A stretch of DNA of 64,000 bases, taken from contig OZ116698.1 of NCBI GenBank assembly GCA_964199315.1, forward strand, positions 34,286,001 to 34,350,000. Reading direction: 5' to 3'. This DNA is from Orbicella franksi (lineage: Eukaryota). Below the pieces are notes generated by a model that worked only from the letters and a program-made list of their open reading frames with translations, had not been told where the DNA came from and did not search any database. The position numbers and the translations under genes are program-made. Of the stretch, positions 54-17,258 are shown piece by piece (the first letter of the stretch is position 1; every line of letters starts with the position of its first letter).

Positions 54-3000
54 AAAAAGGTTATTGAAATACATGTAGAGATATGAAGCATTGGAGCTGT
101 AAAATACATTCGGGAATATTGGGACTAATTTACTGAACTATGGGCTTAACTATATAAGGATTATTTTCTAGTTCTGTGAAACATACAAATATGCATGTCT
201 GGTCTAGAATGCAGTTTATAACTGAATTTGTAGTTTAAGTTTCTTCCGCATGGATTCATGATTCAAAACCAACTTGGTGAAAGTATTTAGTCAGAGAATT
301 TATAAAATGCCTAATGAAATCAAGGAACTGTTTTCCTATCATTTAATAAGCCAATATTTATCGCTGACCAGTCACCTAGTCAATATTACAAAAGATCCCT
401 GTCTGTTTACTGTTACCCATTCTCAGTGCTTTTAAACCAAGCTAGATGAACAAAGTTCAAAGCAAAGGAAAAGGATAACATTTAATATCCTTTTAAAACT
501 GGAAGTATATAACTGAGACTGTTAGAAATGTCTGTAATATAAAGTACTCGGTAATGACAAAATATTTCAAAATATAAATATAAGTAATCTCTTAGATGAT
601 AGTGTGTTTTAGTCAGTGGGAAGGTTTCCTTCTTAAACATAGGAATAAATTGATTCATAAATTCAGAATCATTATGTTATGTTTGAAAAAAATGTAGATA
701 AAATTGTATTATCAGAATAGTATAAATCTGTGCTTGAAAATAAAACACATACTTAGGATAAATAATCGAATGTGTTTTCTATATCCTTACAACCTTACCT
801 CATCTTTATAAAAACAAAATATATTCCAATAGGAACCTAACACAAGGGGCTTCCCGGCTGTTACAATGCAAAAACGTTTTTTTTTTTCCAAGAAAGCGTT
901 TCTTTTAGCATTAACTAACAAAGTGTCCATACACTGTTTTTCCACTGATACATACATAAATGTTCACCCTGCTTAAGGAGAACATTAATTTTATGAAGAA
1001 TAACATACATTCATGTATGTAGGTGAACATGTATTACCAAGTCTGATATAAGCGGCTTCACATAAGTAATTTTCAACTGATTTATTCAAGGATAACAATT
1101 ATCATAAAAAGTGACATTCATCAAACAAGTTCTTTGAACACGTTTGGGTCACTGTAGAAACTTTAGAAGAAAGCAAATAATAAAAGTAAACTTGAAAGCT
1201 GTCTTTACATTGTTGCCTGTTTAAAACTTCCTATATAGGAACACCTTTTTGTAGAAAAAAATAAACAAAACAAAAAATGTTTGTTCACCCTGTAGTTTTA
1301 TTTCTTGTGATATGCTAATAAAACAAAAAGATAAATTTTGTGATTCTAGAAATGCAATTTAAGTATGCTCCAGTTGGTTAGACGGGACTGGACATGGGTT
1401 CATTATCTGCAGTCATTGAAGCAAAAATATATACTATTTTTGATGTTGAAATGAGGTACATTTTGATTAGAGCAAGTTAAGAAAACATATTTAATATTTA
1501 AGTAAACACATTTTCAGGTAAAATTTACTGAGGAGAATTGGTGCATCCATAACAAGACAATGCATTATGTTGGTCTATGTTTAAAGTTGAAATCATTTAA
1601 TATCAAGTCCAATATCACAAAAGACATCAATGCTTTAGAAATTAGCATTTTCTCAAGTGAAGGCTGGGTAAATGGATTTAGAAAATGTGCTGTTTTGAAT
1701 GTGAACATTTTCTTGAAACCTACAATTCACAAAACTGTAATTAAACATGAGAAACTATTGTTGCATGGAGCCATGTATTACCATGCTAAAGATTCAACTC
1801 ATTAAAAATTTTGTCTAGTGAGGAGTTACTCAGGCTTATGTGTTATTTAAAAGTTACAATATAAAATGAAAAATGAATTTTAGAACGAAAACCTCAATTC
1901 TATCTTAAAAAATGTCCACAATTATCCATTAAAATTCCAAAAAAATTGAAAATATCTCCATTTTTAACATTGTTATATTTCTTAATTTTTTTACTGCAGT
2001 TAAGTCATATTGAAGTAGACATCATTAAAATGACAAAAGCCAGTGTCGTTTCAGGTTAATGATCAATCCAAACAGTATTCTCTTCAACTGTGACTAAAAT
2101 AACAGCTTTAACCAGTTAAGGCAGTTGATTTTGTTTAAAATAAACAGCTAGTTTTATCTCAACAGGAAAATTGTCCTTGACTAGAAGTGCTATCTGTTCA
2201 CTAATGGAAAAATTATGGTAGCTGCAGAGCTTTATGTGTTTTACAATAACAACTGCCAATGATTTGAAAGTCTACAATACATTTTCTTCCCAAAATGTAG
2301 ATAACCACAATCACCATTATATTATTGCTGCAACACACATCATTCAGTGGCAAGTAATGAAGCTTTGCGCATAAAGAAACAAATTGGATTCAAAAGGTTA
2401 AATTCACAAAGCAGCAATTCCAAGCTCAAACCTATGAGTTCTGTCACAGGTTTTGCACATTTCATTAGTGTTGCATAATATTATACAGCCTTTTGTTGTT
2501 TACTAGTTTTGTCAGTGATTATTTTGGCACTGGCCAGCTCAATCAGATTTGTATAATTATGTAGAAAAGGTTCTACCACACACTTTTAAGCTGTAGTTAC
2601 ACTAACCTGGTAAAACCTAGTACCCTGCTAAGTGTGCCAAAGTACAAATGTGGGACATTTTCTATTAACATTTCCACTCGGAGACAAGTAATGAACTATG
2701 AATGAACAGCACTGCCTACATATATATCAAGTACCAGTACTGCTCAGTCCACGCCACTTTCTACTTGAATGGTGAATCCCATATAAATGCAGCCACATTT
2801 TAGGCTTTTGTCTTCGCTCAAATGTTACAAGCTTAAAGCAGCTTAGACAGCAAAAGGGAATGGCTGCACACTGGGTTTTTCCTTCACAGGCACAATTAAT
2901 GAAATTTTTTTGCGGCATATTAAATGGTGCAACACCCAAAACTGCTCAATAGATTTCATTTGAGTGGTTGCACAGAAGGTCTAAATCCAAAAAAATATAA

Positions 3001-4395
3001 AACCTCATTGCCCTGAGATATGAAATTATAACATAAAATAAGTTTGCCTTGGGTCATGAGTATTGTAACAAGAAAAATGTAGCCTTCTCAGTATTATTTC
3101 AAGATCATCAGGATATTTGAAGTTTCGTTTGTATCTCATAATGCATCTGATACTTCTCTCAAGTTGACAACGTTTTTTGCAGTTTATGATTGATGATCTC
3201 TTAAAAGTATTGCTTTCAGACAGGCAGGAAAAAATTTTGACCTAAATTTCTTTAGAAGAAAAACTTTTCTCTGCATGGTCAATTAAACCAGGCGGCAAAA
3301 TCACCCTCACAGCCAGTCAATTTTCCTATTGCTGGCCCTTAATAAAACCCCTGAGGTTCATTCTGTCAGAAGAAACTTAATGACATAAAAAATGGCACAA
3401 AATATTGTCACATAGTTCAATATTAACTGCAAGTCAGGAAAGGATGTGCCATTTAAAAATTTTCTCAATTAAGTGCCCCCGAGCATGTATTTCAAACTTG
3501 CCTTCATTGATCTACCATTTATTTGACTTTTGCAGTACATTCGAGGCTGGAGTTTATTAGACTTTTCATTTATTATTTTGAGAGCTAAATGTCTTGTAAT
3601 TATAGCTTACTAAGTTTATTATACCTTGAATACGAAATCCTTGAGGGTCTTATTTACAAATCTACCTGGGAGACATGGCATTTTCTCGGGACCTAGCGTT
3701 TAATACAGAGAAACTTTGGTATATTGATTATCTGCCTCTGTGTGTCCATCAAACATACTTTCTCACATTCCATGATATTATGCAAATCCCACAATTAAAG
3801 AATTAGACAGATGATTTCCAATTTCTAGATTAAAGAGTAGTGGACATATCTTGTATCGCGTTTCCCTTTCAAAGCTGATCGATCACCTGTGCTTATGATA
3901 GACAGCTGACAGTCAAGATCTGCTTGTTGATTATTCAGTCTACACAACCATATGTTGTAAGACAACTGACTTGTCTAAATTGGAAGTGATGAATAGCACC
4001 CCAATGTATGTTTTTCACCTGCTAAATGACATTGTCGATTATCTGCAAACTATTGGTCAAGAAATCAATTCCAATTTGTCAAGCACCTTTATAATTGTGT
4101 ATTGCCTTTGATGTAATTTACAATAGCTAGTGCAGCTCTCTACTGATTAAGAGGGGATTTTGCCATTAAATTAAATTGCTCAGTCTAATAGGTCTTAAAA
4201 TTGAAAATTTACAATATGGTATCATTCAGTTTACAATTATGCCCATTGTCAATTTGTGTGTTTTCGTATGGATTGCTGGCTGAAAGTTTTAATCACTTGT
4301 CCTTTAGTTTTGCCTCTTGTAAACTGCTGTTGATATAATTTTCCACTATATACGAAAGATAAATTACTCTCGTGTAATTTCAGTAATAAGCTAAC

Positions 4396-8598: not shown

Positions 8599-9397
8599 TT
8601 TGCTGCCAGACAAGTTGGTCACAAACGTGGTAATACGTGCAACACATGGTTTCAACTTGCAATACAACAATGTTGCGAGACAAGCTGAAGAAAAATGTTG
8701 CCCGTATTACCGGACCTTTAGTTCTGGCTTACTCTTACAGATCTTGGCTTCAGAGTACTCTTCCATCGATTCAATTTTGAGCTTCGTTGGATAATGAACT
8801 ATTTTTGGCCACTGGAACTAAGTAATTAAAGTCAATATAATTTGTTTAATGTACTCAAAATATAGCCGTTCCCACGATTAAAATCACAATGCAAGGCGAT
8901 TCGAAGTCCTGGTCGTGAACAGAATAAATAGTTGTTGTCCCAGTTATGTAACGAAAGCACGTCATGTCGCATCCTGACAAAAGAGGCCACTCACGGTCCA
9001 GAATCAAACAACAAACAAGCGATCGCGAACGATCTAAAAAGCAAATCATCTTGTTTACATGTGCTTTGCGATGATGTTATTTGTTTTTGCCGGGCCAAAC
9101 AATATTACTCTAGTCTGCATTGGGACTGCATTCCCTTTTTTGTCGAATGCAATCAGAGTGAAAAACCAATTCGAAGAAGATTCCAAAACGTCGAAAACAG
9201 CGAAAGAAGCCACAAAAGAGAACAAGAATGACGTAGCAAATGGACACGAAATGTACAGCACATGGTTTGGCGATGATGTCATTCGTTTTTGCCCCTGCTG
9301 CGGGGCGGCCAAATCGGTGTTGCAAGATCTAAGGAGAACCGTCCCATGAAACTTGACTCAAGTCTGCATTAGGACTGCGTTCTACGAACGCAATAAT

Positions 9398-9403
9398 AAC
9401 AAT

Positions 9404-9462
<59 letters not shown>

Positions 9463-9500
9463 TGACAATAATGAAAATCAGAATAAGAATAAGAATGATA
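9398..9500. repeat. (ACAACG)n / (AATAAG)n simple repeat
   Basis: Directly visible; it follows an imperfect internal duplication at ~9065-9380. Confidence 0.9.
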
Positions 9501-11236
9501 ATATGCTCCTGTAATAATAAATAGTATTTTTATAGGGCCTATCCAAGTGTGATCTAGGTGCGTTACAAGTTATAAAATACAAATAGAATAATATTAAAAA
9601 ATAAAATAAAACAAGTTATGTTATTTGTTTGTTTGTACAGTGGAACCCCGTTAATATGGACATCAAGGGGACATGCCAAAATGTCCGTATTAACGGGGTG
9701 TCCGTATTAACCGGGGTCCTCGGAAAAAAGTCACGGACACGTGTTTTATCGATACAAACACTAAGGCCGACACTTGTACGACAACAAAACGTTTTAATAG
9801 TACTGTAAATTACAAATCATTAACTGTATCACTCTCGGACTAAAATAAATTTTATGTTGTACAGACTGTTCTTGAAATCAGTTGAAAAAGTCCATGACGT
9901 TACTTTACACAAGGAATATAGCAGAGTACTTTAGCAGCATTAAAATGGTGTTTAGCTTCTTCTGCAACTGGAACTGTAACAAGTTTAACTTTTCAAGATA
10001 AGTTTAAATTTTGTCTACTCTTCTTAAACTCCTCAGCAGACTCGTTCACTCATTCAAAGAAGTCTGTGACTTTTCGTTGTACTGACGCATTTAGTTTTCG
10101 ATTCAGCCAGATGTACAGAATGTTAGACACCTTGGAAAGGTTATTCGCTGCTGCCGTAAGGTTTTCATTTGTTAGATATTCCGTCACGTCCTCTAGCATT
10201 GCCATGGCTTCCTTCATTGACTTGACTTTGGGTTCCTTCGGCTGGGCATTGGCCTCAATAATATCATCGTCACTGTCATCGTCTTGTGAATTCTGGGAGG
10301 TGCATGTCGATAGACTAGAGAAAAATTCCTCTTCCCAATTAGCACTCAGCTCTTTGCACGTTGGCAGAATGGAAGTTGCTTCTAAGGCATCGACTGCTGA
10401 AGGTATATCTGAACCAGACCCGGAACTCGCATCACACAACAATGAATTCACCTACACCAATTCGCCTGATTCTAGGTCCTCGAATGGATCAAATTCGCGG
10501 TGTTCCGCAGGAAATGAAACGAGAGAGCCGTCTGCTGAAAGAAAACCTGCCTTAACAAAGCATTTCTTGATGGTTGATTCTGACACGTTTTCCCATGCCT
10601 GGGCAGCCCACCTTATGGCTTGTAGTAAATCCACAGACTTGCACACTTCAGTGGCAGAGTTGCAATCATCTGTTTTGCTGACGACATGTGTCAGCGTCAG
10701 TTTCATGTATTTCAGCTTAAATGTTTGGATAATTCCAAGATCAAGAGGCTGGAGTCTGGATGTACAATTTGGTGGAAAAGACACAACCTTGATGTGGTCG
10801 TATTTGCCTTTCATATCTGGAGGATGGCAAGGGACATTGTCCAGAAATAAATAACATTTCTTCGCTCTCGTGCTAATTTCCTGTTAAGCTTGGATAGTAC
10901 GTCATCAAGGATGTTAAAATCCATCCAGGCTTTTGGCTGACTGAAGTATGAGCAAGGTAGTTGAGACGTATCCCCGATTGCTTTAAAGCAATGCGGGCTT
11001 TTTGACTTGCCAGTGACAATTGGTTTTTCGCTACCATCCGCTGCATTAACAAAAAATGCGCACGTCACTCTTTCTTTGGACTTTTTCCCTCCAGTGCTGT
11101 AATATTCTAGAGCCAATAAACCAGCCAAAACTCGGGAACGCAACTCCATTTTTTTTCAAGCGACTGACAACGTGTTTCATCCGACCGAACGATTGGAAAA
11201 CTACTGGAGGAGCGGTTACACAGCTCACATTCTACA

Positions 11237-11250
11237 CTCCCCCACTAAGC
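11237..11250 (-). other. Polypurine tract of the Gypsy element
   Basis: gcttagtgggggag immediately precedes the 3' LTR on the minus strand. Confidence 0.75.
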
Positions 11251-12262
11251 CATGAAAACTAGTGCAATAAATCAACGACAAAACTTAGCTTGCAGTTCTT
11301 AAGTGTCTCTGTCCTAATAACCTAAAAAGTCACTTAATGACAAAATCAGCCAAGTATCGAGGCGCGTGTCTGTTCCTAGTAGGGTAACGCTTCTCTGGAA
11401 TGCCTTGGGTAGTTGATTGCACAGGAACAGCTGGCTCCCTTTGGGTTTCTTCCCACTGCAATTCTGGCTGTTCAACTGCCGGCGATGCTGGAATTGGGTC
11501 TGCTGGACCCTCTTGATCAGCAATAGGCGCTTGGGGAATGCAGGATCGCTGTATAAGGTGGTCTTGGTGACGTCTCAAGAGTCGGCCATCTTCTAGCTGA
11601 ACTGCGAAGGAAGTTGGACCCGTTGACTCTTTCAAGATTCCAGGTAACCACCTTGGTCCTCTTCGGAAGTTGCTTGCGTAAACTGCTTCCCCTTCCTGCA
11701 TGGTGCGTTCCTTAGCGTGCCAGTCATGTGCCTGTTTCTGAGAAGCTTGGCTTTGTGGCACTTTCCTTCCGATTTCCGGGTAGACTAGGTCTAGTCTTGA
11801 TCTGGGTTTCCTTCCTAGAAGTAATTCTGCAGGGGACACTCCTGTTGAAGTCTGTGGGGTGATTCTGTAACGAGCTAGAAATTCTGGAACTCGTGCCTCC
11901 ACACTTCCTCCACTCATCGTCTTCATTCCCTCCTTGAATGTTTGTACCGCTCTCTCAGCCAGTCCGTTAGACGCTGGGTGGTAGGGTGCTGTTCTGATGT
12001 GACGGATCCCGTTCTGTTTGAGGAAATCTCCAAACTCTTTGCTCGCGAAGTTGCTGCCATTGTCTGTGACGACAATTTCCGGTAGGCCATGTGTCGCGAA
12101 AGCGATTCTCAATTTCTCAATGGTAGCACTTGAAGTTGATGTATTCATTGGAAACGCCTCCATCCACTTAGAGTGGGCATCCATCACAATGAGAAACATT
12201 TTTCCAAGGAACGGACCCGCATAGTCTAGGTGGAGTCGAACCCAGGGTTTATGAGGCCATTC

Positions 12263-12491
12263 AACAACAACAACAACAACAACAGTTTATTTCTACTACT
12301 GTAAACAACTAAAAGAATTTACAAGATTGTAATTATAAATAAATAAATAAACAGTACAGTACATACAGTAGTGGGACACCCAAAATAACTAAAAAGCTAA
12401 ACTAGTTGGGTGACCGTAATTATAATAATTAAAAATGTAAGAGTCAGGAAAGAGGCACAACAAATACATTGGTACACATAAGATTGGAATA
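12263..12491 (-). mobile_element. 5'-truncated LINE 3' end with AATAAA and (GTT)n tail, inserted in the Gypsy integrase region
   Basis: Interrupts PLHPWE|WPHKPWVRLHLDYAGP; flanked by an ATTC duplication (12259-12262, 12492-12495); ends AATAAAC(TGT)n on the minus strand. Confidence 0.85.
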
Positions 12492-15470
12492 ATTCCCAGG
12501 GATGTAGAGGGGCTTCTGGCGGTGACTTCCTGTTTTCCTGGGAGGGACTGCACTGGTGAACCTTCTGCTCTAAGTCTGCATCCATTTTTGGCCACCACAC
12601 ATAACTTCTCGCCAACGCCTTCATACGGCAAATTCCAGGGTGTGTCTCGTGTAACTCTTCTACCACTCTTGCTCTTTCCTTAGGGGGGACCACTACTCGA
12701 TTGCCCCACAGCAAACATCCATCTTGAACACTTAATTCATCTTTCCTAGTGAAGTAGGACTACAATGCTTCATCTGAGTTGTGATTAGGCCAACCATGCT
12801 GAACGAACTTGATTACTTGTGACAGTATTGGATAACATCTGATTCCGGTTCTGATCTCATTCACACTCACTGGTGTTGAATTGAGGAGTTCCATTGCAAA
12901 CACAGTTTCTGCAGACAAAGGTGTAGTTGAAGGACTAACCGGCAAGGGTAGTCGGCTGAGGGCATCAGCATTGGCATGTTCTGGTCCTGGTTTGTACTCA
13001 ATGGAGTAGTTGTATGCAGCTAGAGTCAAGGCCCAACGCTGAATTCTAGCTGCTGCCATAGGGGGTGTGGCCTTCTTCTCATTGAACAATGATTCCAATG
13101 GTTTGTGATCAGTCACTAGACTAAAATGTCTGCCGTAAATGTACTGGTGAAATTTCTTCACACCAAATACCAGGGAAAGTGCTTCTCTCTCAAGATTGGT
13201 ATAATTTCTTTCTGCATTGGACGGTGTACTGGAAGCATATTCGATTGGATGTTCTGAGCCATCATCCATTCGATGTGAGAGAACAGCTCCCAAGCCATAT
13301 TGTGAGGCGTCGCATGCCAAGGTTAACTTCTTCTGACTTCTGGAAAGCCTGCATCTGCTCTTTACCCCAATGCCAGCGGGTTTCTTTACGTAGTAAATCA
13401 TGCAATGGAGCCAACACGCTCGACAGGTTAGGCAGGAATTTCTGGTAGTAGTTAATCATGCCTAGGTACGATTTCAGTTCCGACACATTCTTGGGTGCTG
13501 GTGCATTGGTGATCACTTCGACCTTGTCATCCAATGGTTGAATACCTTCTTTGCTGACCTTGTGACCCAGGTAGGTTACTTGAGGTTCCATGAACACACA
13601 CTTGTTTTTCCGAAGTCGCAAACCAGCACTTGCTAGTCGTTTCAAGACTTCTTCCAGGTTGTTTAAGTGATCTTCATCGCAGGCTCCGGACACTAGGATG
13701 TCATCCACCCGGACAATTACATAAGGAATGTTCTGCAGTAGATTCTCCATGTTCCGCTGAAATATTTCTGGTGCTGACGATATCCCGTAGGGTAGGCGGT
13801 TGTACTGGAACAACCCCTTGTGTGTGTTAATGGTGGTGTACTGTTTAGATTCAGCATCCAGAAGAAGCTGCTGGTAGGCGAGGCTCATGTCCAACTTCGT
13901 GAATTTTTCACCTCCTCCTAGTGTCGCCAGGAGGTCTTCAACCTTCGGGATAGGATAACTGTCCAGTTTTGAAACTTGATTGACAGTTGTTTTGTAGTCT
14001 CCGCAGATGCGAATTGAATCGTCTGGTTTCAGAATAGGTACAATGGGAGCAGCCCATTCCGAGAACTGAACCGGTTCAATCGTTCCCTCATCTTGTAGCC
14101 TCTTGAGTTCAGACTCAATCTTCCCTGTCATAGCATATAGCACTGGTCTCGCCTTCAAGAATTTTGGTTGTGCCTCTGATTCCACATGAATTTTCGCCTT
14201 TGGGCCCTTGAAGGTCCCAAGTCCTTCTCTAAACACTTCTGAGTACCGGTCAAACAATTTTTCAAGTGAAGACCCTTGGTTGTTTTTGACAACTTGCATT
14301 TTGAACAACTCCTTCCAGTTGAGTGTCAGAACTCTCAACCAGTCCCTTCCCAGTAAGTTAGGCCCAGATCCTTCCACCACGAGTGTTTGCAGTTCCACTT
14401 CTTATTTCTCATACTTCACAATAACATTCAAAGTTCCTATGACCTTGACTAATTCACCTGTGTACGTTCGGAGCTTCACTTTAGCAGTTTCCAATCGCTT
14501 TCGGTTCTTCACCAGATTCCCTGCAATAATTCTCTTGTAGGTTCCTTCGTTGATGATCGTAGCAGCGGCGCCAGTGTCCACTTCCATGCTCGTCTGAACT
14601 CCGTTTAGCTGTAGCTCGACTCGCAACGGTTCTCTCTCCGCGGCGTTTATGTGAAACATCGTGTATTCTTCGCATTCTTCCTCACCCGACTCGTCTGTTG
14701 CCTCCAGGTGATGTGTATTTCCAAATTTGCCGCTCTTTCGAAACTCAGGTTTACGCTTACCGAGACATTGGCTTGCCTTGTGACCTTTCTTACGGCATTT
14801 GTAGCACTCTTCGTCTTTATACCTGCACTTATCAGGATCGTGGAATTGTCCTCCACAACGATAACATTCTTTTGTCGGCCTTTTTGGATCCCTTGGTGGC
14901 TGTTTCGGTGGGTCTTGGGTCACGCGGTGAACTTGCGATTCTTCGGGTTTCTCACTCAGATTTCCAGCAATCAGATCCCGTGTATTCCTGTCGGCAATTT
15001 CCATCGCGGTGGCTAATTCCATCGCCTTCTTGAACTCTAGTTGACTTTCAGCAAGCAATCTCCGCTGTATCCGTTCGTCGTTCAATCCGCAAACCAGTCG
15101 ATCACGCAGCGTTTTCTCCAGTTGGTCGCCAAAGTCGCAGTGCTCCGATAAATTCCTCAGTTCGGCGACATACTGTTGTATTGTTTCTCCCTGCTGACGA
15201 AAGCGGCTGTTAAACTTGAAGCGATACACGATAGATGATGGTCTAGGATTCAAATGATTCTTTACCAAATTAACCAGCTCTACGAACGACTTGTCGGTAG
15301 GCTTCCTTGTATTAACCAAATTCCTGATGAGCAGAACCGCCCGTTTCTTGTTGTTGTCCGTAATCTCATTCGCCGCGAAATACTGCTCGAGCCGTTCGGT
15401 GTACTCAATGCAGCTGTCGTTCTCGTTGTATTACTCGATTTTCCCGATCAATGCCATGGTTTTGTCCGTA

Positions 15471-15481
15471 CCTCGTCGCCA
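15471..15481 (-). other. Primer-binding site TGGCGACGAGG (tRNA-Ser(GCU)-type)
   Basis: Lies 1 nt inside the 5' LTR. It is complementary to a ...CCUCGUCGCCA 3' end, which I recall as metazoan tRNA-Ser(GCU). Confidence 0.7.
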
Positions 15482-16400
15482 GTGTAATATTCTAGAGCCA
15501 ATAAACCAGCCAAAATTCGAGAACGCAACTCTATTTTTTTTCAAGCGACTGACAACGTGTTTCATCCGACCGAACGATCGGAAAACTACTGGAGGAGCGG
15601 TTACACACCTCACAACATTCTACAAGTGCACTGCTTTGATGCCTCGGCTAGAGATCTGTTTGGAAGTGCTCGAAAAAATTGCCCTGTCTCATCCATGTTA
15701 AGACGTTCTCTGGGGAGTAGCCGCTCAAGATAGTCGGTAGCCGCTCTTTCCAAGATGTTACAGTTTCTTCACTAACACCACCTGCTCACCACTTATAACT
15801 TTGCTTGTAATGTTGTACCTTTTCTTAAATCTGTCCAGCCATCCATTAGATGCTTTGAATGTCGAGTCACCGAGCTCTTCACTCGCTCGTTTGGCTTTTT
15901 CTTGCAGCATTGGCCCGGTAACTGGAATGTTCTTGGTTCTTGCTTTTTGGTACCACTCGTACGTTGCCTCGTCTACATTTTTCAACGGCGATGCTCTAGC
16001 CCGTTTAGAATGTGCATTCTTGTTCGCGCTGTAATCTTCCAATATTTCAAACCTCTTCGCTAAAATAGACTGAATTTGCGATTTGCCGCAATCAAACTTC
16101 CCAGCAATTGCTCGCACACTAGCATTTGGGTTTTCCTTTTTGTACTCAATGACCTGAACCTTTTCAGAAGCAGTTAAATCTCTTCTTTTGCGCTTAGCTG
16201 AAGGATGTGAAGCCATGATTGATGATCCGATGAATGTGGCGGCACGCTACCTTGTTCACTCACGTTGACTTGTGGAGACTGACAAGCTGTCACATACAAC
16301 CGCAAGCCGCAACTCAAAAGAAATACAAAGGTACTTTCAGGTCTAATTACACTTCACATTACAGAATTCGACAAAGCATCACGTGTGGGGACTGAAAAGT

Positions 16401-16985
16401 ATGTGTGACCACCGAATATTGAAAATTTCTTCCTGGATAAGAGAATTTCATGTTTACAAGGACTGGTGGACTCCTACAGGCGGTGAAATTTTGCCTTTGC
16501 GACCAGAGCCGGAAAATGGTGAGGACAAAAACGCAGTCGCCGTGCTAAAGGAAAGTCGAGTTATCGGCCACATTCCATATCACCTCGCAAACACCAAAAA
16601 CCGCACTGGTATAGTCACCCATTTTATTTCAAAGCCCACTAATCGTGGATCAGTTGAAGTATGTGGAAACGCAGTTAATCGGGGTGGAGGCCTTCGTATG
16701 GAAATACCGTGTGTTTATATTTTTGATGATCCTAGGAAGCACGTGGATATACTTGAACAATTAATAGACGTTGGCAACAACCCAGCAATACGAACGGAGG
16801 CCGATGCTGATAGTGGCAAGCATAAGACGTCAAAGAGGAAGAAGGCTACAAGCAAGGACTGTAGCAAAAGACCAAGAAAGTTAAACTTTTGTGTAAACGT
16901 ATCAGGCAGAAAACTTTATATAAGGACTGCAGACTGGGTAATGCACCGGAAGAAAGAACTGGTCAAATGCGTCACGCTATTTTGA
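16401..16985 (+). CDS. HIRAN-domain protein (~195 aa) encoded inside the Tigger element, divergent from the transposase
   Basis: SWIREFHVYKDWWTP..GEILPLRPEPENGEDKNAVAVLK...IGHIP...NRGGGLRMEIPCVY matches the HIRAN pattern (V/IRG.H.Y, EP.N..D..AVAV, GHVP). Basic C-terminus KRKK...KRPRK. First ATG is at 16401 (the ORF track starts at GTG 16383). Confidence 0.8.
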   Translation: MCDHRILKISSWIREFHVYKDWWTPTGGEILPLRPEPENGEDKNAVAVLKESRVIGHIPYHLANTKNRTGIVTHFISKPTNRGSVEVCGNAVNRGGGLRMEIPCVYIFDDPRKHVDILEQLIDVGNNPAIRTEADADSGKHKTSKRKKATSKDCSKRPRKLNFCVNVSGRKLYIRTADWVMHRKKELVKCVTLF

Positions 16986-17258
16986 CCAGGGTGCAAAATA
17001 TCTAATTAGCACATAATCATGACAATGACAATAGACACTGCACAGATACAAACAGTGTCCGTAAAGCGGGGTTGACGATGTATAAGAGTTTGTCGCTCGG
17101 GACACAGAAAAGTGTCCGTTGTCCGTGTTAACGGGTGTCCGTAATAAGCGGGTTAATTTTAGAAAAAATATATGAGCTTTTCGTCGGGGAAAACGAAACT
17201 GTCCGTAATATCGGTTGTCCGTATTAAGCGGGTGTCCGTAGAGCGGGGTTCCACTGTA

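What the first reader, a model, noticed from the sequence alone, without database searches (positions are those of the whole stretch)
9638..17256. Two-gene Tigger/pogo transposon carrying a divergently transcribed HIRAN-domain gene
Seen: within one TIR pair (TA|CAGTGGAACCCCG...CGGGGTTCCACTG|TA) a DD32D transposase runs on the minus strand, and a ~195-aa ORF (16401-16985) starts head-to-head only ~185 bp away on the plus strand. The ORF has HIRAN motifs and a basic NLS-like tail. It is still open, whereas the transposase has at least three frameshifts and an LTR insertion. Established: pogo/Tigger elements are usually described as single-ORF elements; HIRAN in HLTF/Rad5 binds free 3'-OH ssDNA ends and acts in fork reversal. 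Inference: this may be a family whose accessory protein binds the 3' ends made during cut-and-paste, steers insertion to replication forks, or biases repair of the excision gap. I know of no description of pogo+HIRAN elements but cannot exclude one. Caveats: some residues look non-consensus (IREFH rather than IRG.H), and the tail after KRPRK may be read-through from a 1-nt insertion, so this copy may be decaying neutrally.
Basis: partly seen in the sequence, partly recalled or inferred. Interest (0 to 1): 0.82.

Follow-up and report, generated by a model that had tools for sequence, protein, structure and literature searches.

The report
Tigger transposon with HIRAN accessory gene
This is a decayed copy of a coral "jumping gene" of the Tigger/pogo type which, unusually for that group, carries a second conserved gene for a small DNA-end-binding (HIRAN) protein, a pairing that recurs in many related elements and hints at a link between transposition and DNA replication or repair.

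Summary
Window 9638-17256 is a 3,087-bp Tigger/pogo element with TA duplications and 13-bp inverted ends. It is split by a 4,527-bp LTR retroelement. The DD32D transposase is broken by three frameshifts and one stop. A HIRAN ORF starts 184 bp away, head-to-head.

ORF2 is a real HIRAN domain: Pfam 26-27 bits, an AlphaFold model at pLDDT 80, and human HLTF HIRAN as the best fold match (Z 11.7). It is a family feature, not a one-off capture:
- Other corals hold 3,006-bp copies with both ORFs intact.
- Between lineages dN/dS is 0.17-0.21 for HIRAN and 0.12-0.15 for the transposase. Dead copies give about 0.85.
- HIRAN identity falls in step with transposase identity.
- In this genome about 33 HIRAN hits, of at least eight ORF types, lie beside a DDE_1 hit.
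- Distant relatives keep the pairing in convergent or tandem order.

The transposase ends in a PCNA-binding-type motif (QRKVTDFF). My inferred mechanism is a 3'-end-binding helper acting at replication or repair intermediates; this was not tested. I found no paper describing the pairing, and Repbase/Dfam could not be checked. First readers of this scan noted similar elements elsewhere in this genome. The window copy itself is decaying.

The parts
9636..9637 (.). Left TA target-site duplication
   Evidence: Sequence read. Other copies also have TA on both sides, at unrelated flanks.
9638..9650 (+). Left terminal inverted repeat, CAGTGGAACCCCG
   Evidence: pair I3, 95% complementary over 19 nt including TA. 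The same TIR occurs in L002, L003 and L068-L071.
9682..9732 (.). Left subterminal repeats (TGTCCGTATTAACGGGG-like); probable transposase-binding sites
   Evidence: the repeat finder family D3, shared with the right end. The binding role is inferred.
10053..11097 (-). C-terminal part of the Tigger transposase (about aa 198-546): DDE_1 domain, acidic region and C-terminal motif. One frameshift near 10860 and an in-frame stop at 10452-10454.
   Evidence: tblastn against the intact L068 transposase; Pfam DDE_1; ORF list.
10056..10079 (-). PIP-box-type motif QRKVTDFF at the transposase C-terminus
   Evidence: Q-x-x-[LIVM]-x-x-[FYW]-[FYWL] lies within the last 9-18 residues of 17 of the 28 aligned transposases; the window copy, not a row of that alignment, has it too. 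PMC4231638, citing Warbrick 1998, reports a C-terminal PCNA-binding domain in pogo transposase.
11098..15624 (-). Nested LTR retroelement that interrupts the transposase; not part of the transposon. LTRs at 11098-11238 and 15483-15624 (TG...CA). Flanking 5-bp duplication AGTGC at 11093-11097 and 15625-15629.
   Evidence: (family D1, 96% identity). Pfam finds protease, RVT_1, RT_RNaseH, Integrase_H2C2 and rve in Ty3/Gypsy order.
15625..16216 (-). N-terminal part of the transposase (aa 1-198): CENP-B_N and HTH_Tnp_Tc5 DNA-binding domains. Two frameshifts, near 15785 and about 15700.
16217..16400 (.). 184-bp region between the two divergent start codons; presumed bidirectional promoter
   Evidence: Coordinates. 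Promoter function is inferred and not shown. RNA-library contigs cover it, but strand and DNA carry-over are unresolved.
16401..16880 (+). ORF2, native 160 codons: HIRAN domain (about residues 5-125) plus a basic NLS-like tail ending KRPRK
   Evidence: Pfam HIRAN. AlphaFold model at pLDDT 80. HLTF HIRAN is the top fold match. Family alignments.
16881..16985 (+). Read-through tail specific to this copy: the native stop TGA is changed to TTA at 16881-16883
   Evidence: Alignment with L002, L068 and a deletion derivative.
17055..17243 (.). Right subterminal repeats (GTGTCCGTAAnGCGGGGTT-like, several copies)
   Evidence: the repeat finder families D3 and D5.
17244..17256 (-). Right terminal inverted repeat, CGGGGTTCCACTG
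17257..17258 (.). Right TA target-site duplication

Best explanation
Shown: the stretch is a dead copy of an autonomous two-gene Tigger/pogo cut-and-paste DNA transposon. The element is about 3.0-3.1 kb, with 13-bp TIRs, subterminal repeats and TA duplications. From a short central region it encodes two divergent genes:
- a DD32D transposase with CENP-B_N and HTH_Tnp_Tc5 DNA-binding domains, a DDE_1 core and a C-terminal PIP-box-type motif;
- a roughly 160-aa protein made of one HIRAN domain plus a basic NLS-like tail.
The second gene belongs to the element. It is kept inside the TIRs, is under purifying selection, and diverges in step with the transposase.

Inferred: the HIRAN protein enters the nucleus and binds free 3'-OH DNA ends, as the HIRAN domain of HLTF does. 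The ends it would meet are those made by, or used in, transposition: the short 3' overhangs at the excised donor site, and the 3' ends at the gaps flanking a new insertion or at primer-template junctions. Together with a PCNA-tethered transposase, this would couple transposition to replication-associated DNA synthesis and repair. The effect could be to favour repair of the donor break or insertion gaps, or to steer insertion, in a way that raises the element's copy number.

The window copy no longer functions. The many roughly 1-kb deletion derivatives must have been moved in trans.
For: Anatomy.

HIRAN identity:
- Pfam 26.4-27 bits against a cut-off of 24.7.
- A family profile hits HLTF HIRAN in the PDB at E = 0.002.
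- The model has pLDDT 80 and pTM 0.75.
- Foldseek's top 13 PDB hits are all HLTF HIRAN, E = 6e-6.
- VIA-align gives Z 11.7, rmsd 3.1 A over 114 of 121 residues. All solved HIRAN proteins score Z 7.8-11.7, and the next fold scores 4.2.

Family-level pairing:
- L002 in this genome keeps both ORFs.
- The exact 160-aa protein P0003 is listed in 92 blocks of the collection; the six places shown come from four assemblies, including Porites harrisoni. All six lie head-to-head with transposase ORFs, four of them 513-620 aa and two broken into pieces. L068-L070 are elements of 2,992-3,006 bp with TA on both sides.
- P0051, at 49% identity, is head-to-head with a 546-aa transposase.
- In this genome about 33 HIRAN hits lie 1-1.7 kb from a DDE_1 hit, nearly all divergent, against fewer than 1 expected by chance.
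- More distant relatives are convergent (L031, L032, L036) or tandem (L034, L035) with pogo transposases.

Selection:
- dN/dS for HIRAN is 0.21 (dS 0.44) and 0.17 (dS 1.07); for the domain alone it is 0.10-0.17. For the transposase it is 0.12-0.15.
- Private changes in 14 dead derivatives give about 0.85.

Co-divergence: identities to L068 for transposase/HIRAN are 85/81, 75/68, 41/47, 26/30 and 22/37%.

Pointers to mechanism:
- Family-invariant N40 and nearly invariant D43, G57 and H58 align with HLTF N91, D94, G109 and H110.
- N90A/N91A abolishes HIRAN function in HLTF (PMC11237066).
- The PIP-type motif is at the transposase C-terminus, and pogo transposase is reported to bind PCNA (PMC4231638).
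Against: - No biochemical or genetic test exists. DNA-end binding is inferred from the fold alone.
- By the HMMER alignment, the two tyrosines that stack on the 3' dinucleotide in HLTF (Y72, Y93; PMC4666394) are V and E/K in this family. The pocket may therefore differ.
- The Pfam match covers only profile positions 15-60 of 96.
- Transcription of the full-length element is not shown. PolyA raw reads cover only the deletion derivatives. Contigs from RNA libraries cover the whole stretch but could come from DNA.
- Gene order differs between distant lineages, so the two proteins need not act as a fixed unit.
- Many Tigger/pogo loci in the same genome have no detected HIRAN neighbour, so the gene is not essential to the superfamily.
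Confidence: 0.6

Rival explanations
1. Anti-host decoy. The element's stand-alone HIRAN competes with the host's HLTF/Rad5-type remodeller for 3' ends. This shields transposition intermediates, or the transposase-DNA complex, from being dismantled or reprocessed.
For: The best fold match is the HLTF HIRAN itself, and the protein lacks any motor or RING domain. HLTF uses its HIRAN domain to find a released 3' end and evict Cas9 from cut DNA (PMC11237066). By its title and abstract, PMC6511057 reports that HLTF restricts HIV-1 and is countered by Vpr. The genome has a canonical HIRAN exon scoring 79 bits, probably the host gene.
Against: There is no evidence that HLTF acts on DNA transposons. 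A decoy would still have to bind 3' ends, so this overlaps with the main explanation. The family differs at the two stacking tyrosines.
Confidence: 0.15
2. The HIRAN-fold protein is needed by the element but does not bind DNA 3' ends. It might be a regulator or inhibitor of transposition, a nuclear-import or assembly partner of the transposase as in PIF/Harbinger, or a binder of another ligand.
For: It is under strong purifying selection and has a conserved basic tail. The family has its own signature (S-x-IRGFHVY, NRGxGxGMEIPC) and non-conserved pocket tyrosines. PIF/Harbinger elements need a second, non-catalytic protein (general knowledge).
Against: Equivalents of the HLTF residues N91, D94 and H110 are kept. 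The fold match covers the whole domain, including DNA-bound HLTF structures.
Confidence: 0.17
3. Passenger. The ORF is a host HIRAN fragment captured once and carried along without function, or a host gene that merely lies next to a transposon.
For: The window copy carries damaging substitutions and a lost stop. The abundant 1-kb derivatives hold only a truncated ORF.
Against: - Between-lineage dN/dS is 0.17-0.21, against about 0.85 in dead copies.
- The ORF is intact inside the TIRs at many unrelated sites and in several species.
- HIRAN identity falls with transposase identity down to 22-37%.
- At least eight ORF types in this genome are paired with DDE_1.
Confidence: 0.03

Closest known systems
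Tigger family of the pogo superfamily (IS630-Tc1-mariner group), e.g. elements related to TIGD4/TIGD6
   Same: TA duplication and short TIRs. The transposase has CENP-B_N, HTH_Tnp_Tc5 and DDE_1. The DD32D spacing falls within the Tigger range DD29-36D (PMC7386202). Nearest named proteins are 'tigger transposable element-derived protein 4/6-like'. The C-terminal PIP-type motif matches what is reported for Drosophila pogo.
   Different: It carries a second, non-transposase gene inside the TIRs. PMC7386202 describes pogo elements as having one or two ORFs that encode the transposase. None of the pogo/Tigger surveys returned by the searches contains the word HIRAN.
HIRAN domain of HLTF/Rad5 (PF08797)
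   Same: Same fold: Z 11.7 to HLTF and 7.8-8.0 to Rad5. Equivalents of N91, D94, G109 and H110 are conserved.
   Different: It is a stand-alone protein of about 160 aa with a basic tail and no SNF2 ATPase or RING domain. The Y72 and Y93 equivalents are not aromatic by sequence alignment. It is encoded by a mobile element and is multi-copy.
Two-component eukaryotic DNA transposons such as PIF/Harbinger (transposase plus Myb-like protein)
   Same: A second, non-catalytic, probably nuclear DNA-binding protein is encoded inside the TIRs and conserved along with the transposase.
   Different: The transposase superfamily and the accessory domain both differ. Whether the accessory protein is required, or binds the transposase, is untested here.
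Tn7 TnsE pathway (bacterial)
   Same: This is a functional analogy only: a transposon-encoded factor that recognises 3'-recessed ends together with the sliding clamp (general knowledge). Here there is a 3'-end-binding fold plus a PCNA-type motif.
   Different: There is no homology. In this element the clamp motif sits on the transposase and the end-binding fold on a separate protein. Targeting to forks is not shown.

Membership tests
Tigger/pogo DNA transposon | Terminal inverted repeats flanked by a TA target-site duplication | tested here: met
   Copies at other loci and in other assemblies also have TA on both sides.
Tigger/pogo DNA transposon | Transposase with CENP-B_N and HTH_Tnp_Tc5 DNA-binding domains and a DDE_1 catalytic domain | tested here: met
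   Window fragments. L002 transposase ORF, 464 aa to a premature stop: DDE_1 122 bits, HTH_Tnp_Tc5 74 bits, CENP-B_N 30 bits.
Tigger/pogo DNA transposon | DDD triad with 29-36 residues between the last two Asp (Tigger range in PMC7386202) | tested here: met
   D176 and D316 are invariant and D283 nearly so in 28 aligned transposases, which gives 32 residues between the last two. Range taken.
Tigger/pogo DNA transposon | Evidence of mobility as a unit | tested here: met
   Full-length copies on three chromosome-scale contigs. At least 25 deletion derivatives of about 1 kb lie about 1.8% from their consensus. The six P0003 places shown lie in four assemblies.
pogo transposase PCNA-binding tail | C-terminal PIP box Q-x-x-[LIVM]-x-x-[FY]-[FY] | tested here: met
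   QRKVTDFF in the window copy, QTKVTDFF in L068, and similar motifs in most full-length relatives. Actual PCNA binding was not tested.
HIRAN domain (PF08797) | Pfam score above the gathering threshold | tested here: met
   26.4 bits (window) and 27.0 bits (L002) against 24.7. Only profile positions 15-60 of 96 are matched.
HIRAN domain (PF08797) | HIRAN fold (beta-barrel with two helices) | tested here: met
   Model pLDDT 80. HLTF HIRAN at Z 11.7, lp_0118 at 9.9, Rad5 at 7.8-8.0, next fold at 4.2. Foldseek E = 6e-6.
HIRAN domain (PF08797) | Asn pair N90/N91 needed for HIRAN function in HLTF (PMC11237066) | tested here: inconclusive
   The N91 equivalent is invariant (N40). The N90 equivalent is E.
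HIRAN domain (PF08797) | Stacking tyrosines Y72 and Y93 that border the 3'-dinucleotide pocket (PMC4666394) | tested here: not met
   By the HMMER alignment these are V19 and E/K42. Nearby aromatics F17 and Y20 are conserved, so a structure-based residue alignment might change this.
HIRAN domain (PF08797) | Binding of DNA with a free 3'-OH end | not testable with these tools
   Needs biochemistry.
Two-component DNA transposon (accessory protein required for transposition) | Second ORF inside the TIRs, conserved and under purifying selection across the family | tested here: met
Two-component DNA transposon (accessory protein required for transposition) | Accessory protein is needed for, or changes, transposition | not testable with these tools
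   Needs a transposition assay.

The most novel reading that the evidence does not exclude
A large clade of animal Tigger/pogo transposons runs a replication-coupled strategy with two parts: a transposase tethered to PCNA by its PIP box, and a separate HIRAN protein that reads free 3' ends. Together they would recognise clamp-loaded primer ends or post-excision 3' overhangs. That would make them a eukaryotic counterpart of Tn7's TnsE pathway, or a decoy against the host HLTF, and it would decide where the element lands or how the donor break is repaired.
Probability: 0.22. Interest if true: 0.9.

Novelty: new variant of a known kind. Interest (0 to 1): 0.72.

Why it matters
Tc1/mariner/pogo elements are usually described as carrying the transposase gene alone, with everything after DNA cleavage left to the host. 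Here a second gene is conserved, selected and repeatedly paired with the transposase. It has the fold that HLTF uses to grasp nascent 3' ends, and it sits in elements whose transposase carries a PCNA-type motif. This suggests that some of these elements take part in the replication or repair steps of their own transposition.

The idea can be tested directly with elements whose two ORFs are both intact (for example the L068-type 3,006-bp element in Porites). It bears on three questions: how cut-and-paste elements gain copies, whether HLTF-type factors restrict DNA transposons, and where stand-alone HIRAN proteins in animal genomes come from. If the accessory protein changes efficiency or insertion-site choice, it could also matter for transposon-based gene-transfer tools.

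Tried and rejected
- Complex prediction on the L068 transposase (546 aa) with its HIRAN protein (160 aa) gave no verdict: score 0.02 against a mark of 0.34, and the alignments were not used. This is not evidence for or against binding.
I judged adjacency from the coordinate tables instead.
- Names for distant homologues: the ten clusters looked up carry none.
- Literature: searches for HIRAN with transposase, transposon, Tigger, pogo, mariner, DDE, transposable elements or Repbase found no description of the pairing. The key HLTF structure papers (Kile 2015, Hishiki 2015) are not held. The role of D94 therefore rests on my memory.
- RNA evidence: one polyA run laid no reads. The other covered only positions 16450 onward, with loose ends at the 16481 deletion joint, so those reads come from the 1-kb derivatives. 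RNA-library contigs cover the full stretch but cannot show strand or exclude DNA.
- Rejected: the 132-nt direct repeat as a duplication of transposase sequence. It is the LTR pair of the nested element.
- Rejected: a 1-nt insertion as the cause of the long tail. It is a TGA-to-TTA change.
- The protein-atlas feature search gave only scores of about 0.90, in mixed bacterial and cnidarian clusters. I treated these as leads only.


Full report
**1. What is in the window**

TA|CAGTGGAACCCCG starts at 9636/9638, and CGGGGTTCCACTG|TA ends at 17256/17258. Both ends carry several copies of a TGTCCGTA-TAA-CGGGG-like subterminal repeat (families D3 and D5).

I aligned the window with a better-preserved copy from the same genome (L002, element 3,151 bp). 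The transposon proper is 9638-11097 plus 15625-17256, with a 5-bp overlap, which gives 3,087 bp.

The 4,527 bp in between (11098-15624) are a nested LTR retroelement on the minus strand.
- Its LTRs, 141-142 bp long, run TG...CA and are 96% identical over 132 nt.
- It is flanked by the duplication AGTGC.
- Its domains are protease, RT, RNase H and integrase, in Ty3/Gypsy order.

The transposase reads on the minus strand from 16216. A tblastn comparison with an intact relative shows frameshifts near 15785, about 15700 and about 10860. Comparison of the ORF lists with the L002 copy adds an in-frame stop at 10452-10454.

ORF2 starts at 16401 on the plus strand, 184 bp from the transposase start codon.

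**2. The transposase**

Pfam finds CENP-B_N, HTH_Tnp_Tc5 and DDE_1. The nearest named proteins are 'tigger transposable element-derived protein 4/6-like'.

In an alignment of 28 relatives, the catalytic D176 and D316 are invariant and D283 nearly so. The last two Asp are therefore 32 residues apart (DD32D). This falls within the Tigger range DD29-36D given in PMC7386202.

The protein ends in QRKVTDFF; the intact L068 relative has QTKVTDFF. A Q-x-x-[LIVM]-x-x-[FY]-[FY]-type motif lies within the last 9-18 residues of most full-length relatives. PMC4231638, citing Warbrick et al. 1998, states that Drosophila pogo transposase has a C-terminal PCNA-binding domain. Binding by the coral proteins was not tested. 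An earlier first-reader note on another piece of this genome (s1-231920) gave me the lead to look for this motif.

**3. ORF2 is a HIRAN domain**

- Pfam HIRAN scores 26.4 bits (window) and 27.0 bits (L002), against a cut-off of 24.7. Only profile positions 15-60 of 96 are covered.
- A profile of 21 family members hits HLTF HIRAN chains first in the PDB, at E = 0.002.
- An AlphaFold model built from that alignment has mean pLDDT 80 and pTM 0.75. Residues from about 137 onward, the basic tail, are disordered.
- Foldseek's top 13 PDB hits are all HLTF HIRAN (E = 6e-6). Next come the bacterial HIRAN protein lp_0118 and Rad5.
- VIA-align gives Z 11.7, rmsd 3.1 A, over 114 of 121 residues of HLTF HIRAN. 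It gives 9.9 for lp_0118 and 7.8-8.0 for Rad5, then drops to 4.2.
- AlphaFold DB cluster hits are small 'HIRAN domain-containing proteins'.

For the pocket residues I used the HMMER alignment.
- Family-invariant N40 and nearly invariant D43, G57 and H58 align with HLTF N91, D94, G109 and H110.
- N90A/N91A disables the HLTF HIRAN domain (PMC11237066).
- The two tyrosines that stack on the 3' dinucleotide in HLTF (Y72 and Y93; PMC4666394) align with V and E/K.
- The role of D94 in contacting the 3'-OH is from my own memory, because the papers are not held.

So fold membership is firm, while 3'-end binding is plausible but unproven.

**4. The second gene belongs to the element**

*Copies in this genome.* A DNA search finds two other full-length copies (L002, L003) and one partly deleted copy (L004). 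It also finds at least 25 derivatives of about 1.03 kb, in which positions 1-203 are joined to 2320-3155. These keep only codons 28-160 of ORF2. L002 has both ORFs: a transposase in one frame with one premature stop, and a 160-codon ORF2 ending KRPRK*.

*Copies in other corals.* The exact 160-aa protein P0003 is listed in 92 blocks of the collection, and the six places shown come from four assemblies, one of them Porites harrisoni. All six lie head-to-head with transposase ORFs: four of 513-620 aa and two broken into pieces. L068-L070 are elements of 2,992-3,006 bp with the same TIRs and TA on both sides, at unrelated flanks. In Oculina patagonica the two hits are consecutive gene models, G033496 and G033497.

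*Selection.* I used Nei-Gojobori estimates between lineages.

| Comparison | dN/dS | dS |
|---|---|---|
| ORF2, L002 vs L068 | 0.21 | 0.44 |
| ORF2, L002 vs L074 | 0.17 | 1.07 |
| ORF2, domain only | 0.10-0.17 | |
| Transposase | 0.12-0.15 | 0.55 and 0.80 |

As an internal control, changes away from the consensus in 14 gap-free dead derivatives give about 0.85, and these copies lie 1.8% from their consensus. This particular copy is decaying all the same. It has G->E in IRGFH and G->R in GLGMEIP, and its stop is changed from TGA to TTA.

*Co-divergence.* Identities to L068 for the transposase and for ORF2 fall together.

| Locus | Transposase identity to L068 (%) | ORF2 identity to L068 (%) |
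|---|---|---|
| L002 | 85 | 81 |
| L074 | 75 | 68 |
| L034 | 41 | 47 |
| L036 | 26 | 30 |
| L031 | 22 | 37 |

This fits long co-inheritance better than repeated capture.

**5. The pairing is much wider than this family**

P0051, at 49% identity, lies head-to-head with a 546-aa pogo transposase.

In this genome I compared the coordinate tables of a HIRAN protein search, a Pfam HIRAN search and a Pfam DDE_1 search. By my reading, about 33 HIRAN hits lie 1-1.7 kb from a DDE_1 hit.
- They belong to at least eight ORF types, with open frames of 128, 134, 147, 166, 174, 191 and 196 aa besides this family.
- All but one are on the opposite strand, in divergent order.
- My rough estimate of the number expected by chance, for about 100 x 150 hits in 497 Mb, is below one.
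- Five of the six copies of the 196-aa type have an intact 492-aa transposase frame beside them.

More distant relatives keep the association but in a different order.
- P0114 and P0117 (38% identity) sit inside a 3.16-kb TIR-bounded element, convergent with the DDE_1 gene, in two copies.
- P0157 is convergent.
- P0123 lies directly upstream of the transposase on the same strand, in two copies.

A profile search of 1.84 billion cluster representatives finds 1,820 proteins at E <= 1e-10, mostly 100-350 aa. They share the signature S-x-[IV]RG[FYH]H-x-Y ... EP-x-N-x-x-D ... VVGH-x-P ... NRG-x-G-x-G-x-E-x-P.

Many DDE_1 loci in this genome have no detected HIRAN neighbour. The gene therefore marks a clade, or several clades, and not the whole superfamily.

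**6. Expression**

Fourteen RNA runs from six studies hold about a third to a half of the sampled words of 15625-17256. That share is about what the abundant derivatives contribute.

When reads were laid on the stretch:
- One polyA raw-read run gave nothing.
- Another covered only positions 16450 onward, with loose ends at the 16481 deletion joint. Those reads come from derivatives.
- Contigs from a coral metatranscriptome cover the whole stretch at word depth about 45-55.
- A polyA library has low-depth contigs over the spacer and the 5' end of ORF2, one of them bridging position 16481.

Contigs cannot show strand or exclude DNA. Divergent transcription therefore remains unshown.

**7. Mechanism**

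Shown: a two-gene element whose second protein has a HIRAN fold and a basic tail, is selected, and is co-inherited with the transposase; and a transposase tail with a PCNA-type motif.

Inferred: the protein binds free 3'-OH ends. Tc1/mariner-type excision leaves short 3' overhangs at the donor site, and integration leaves gaps with 3'-OH ends (general knowledge). These, and clamp-loaded primer ends, are the obvious substrates.

I favour a helper role at these replication or repair intermediates, acting alongside a PCNA-tethered transposase. My confidence in the whole statement is about 0.6. For the part that ORF2 is a genuine accessory gene of the element, it is about 0.95.

Rivals are:
- a decoy against the host HLTF, by analogy with HLTF evicting Cas9 through a released 3' end (PMC11237066);
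- a role that does not involve 3' ends;
- a functionless passenger, which the data contradict.

The complex prediction gave no verdict.

**8. Novelty**

No paper in the searchable library links HIRAN with pogo, Tigger, mariner, transposase or Repbase. The pogo survey PMC7386202 speaks only of one or two ORFs encoding the transposase. Repbase and Dfam could not be consulted.

First readers of this scan noted similar two-gene pogo+HIRAN elements on other pieces of the same genome. Those notes are unchecked, but they agree with my coordinate analysis.

I class the finding as a new variant of a known kind.

Noticed in passing
window 11098-15624: Nested LTR retroelement on the minus strand, 4,527 bp. 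Its LTRs are only about 141 bp long and 96% identical, and it has the 5-bp duplication AGTGC. Protease, RT, RNase H and integrase frames are present but split. I described it only.
   Followed up: partly
window 9400-9480: A (CAACGA)n-type tandem array with 12-nt register lies just left of the transposon. The related string GACAATGACAATA recurs at 17021-17033, inside the element.
   Followed up: no
G000 loci L005-L030 (e.g. L016 1303-2336): A young family of non-autonomous deletion derivatives, about 1.03 kb each. At least 25 copies were scored out of 205 candidates, and they lie 1.8% from their consensus. Most keep an open but 5'-truncated HIRAN frame. These copies, not the full-length elements, are what polyA RNA reads match.
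   Followed up: yes
G000 C3:19912946-19914594, C6:4765172-4766829, C8:5555416-5557073, C8:20616784-20618441, C15:392525-394182: Another Tigger lineage, with an open 492-aa transposase frame and an open 196-aa HIRAN frame in divergent order. At least five copies give nearly identical scores, so the element may be recently active. The DNA could not be fetched.
   Followed up: partly
L034 and L035, 5001-7160: In another assembly the HIRAN ORF ends 1 nt before the start of the HTH_Tnp_Tc5/DDE_1 frames on the same strand. This could be a tandem pair, a spliced or fused arrangement, or a frameshifted one. A second HIRAN-like hit lies at about 9300-9590 on the other strand.
   Followed up: partly
AlphaFold DB entry A0A1X7V3B4: A 343-aa protein whose residues 3-142 match this HIRAN model is named for a ubiquitin-like protease domain. 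HIRAN of this type may therefore also occur fused to, or next to, ULP-type proteases known from other transposon groups.
   Followed up: no
G000 C7:7521895-7522128: The one strong canonical HIRAN hit in the genome (79 bits), probably the host HLTF/Rad5-type gene.
   Followed up: no
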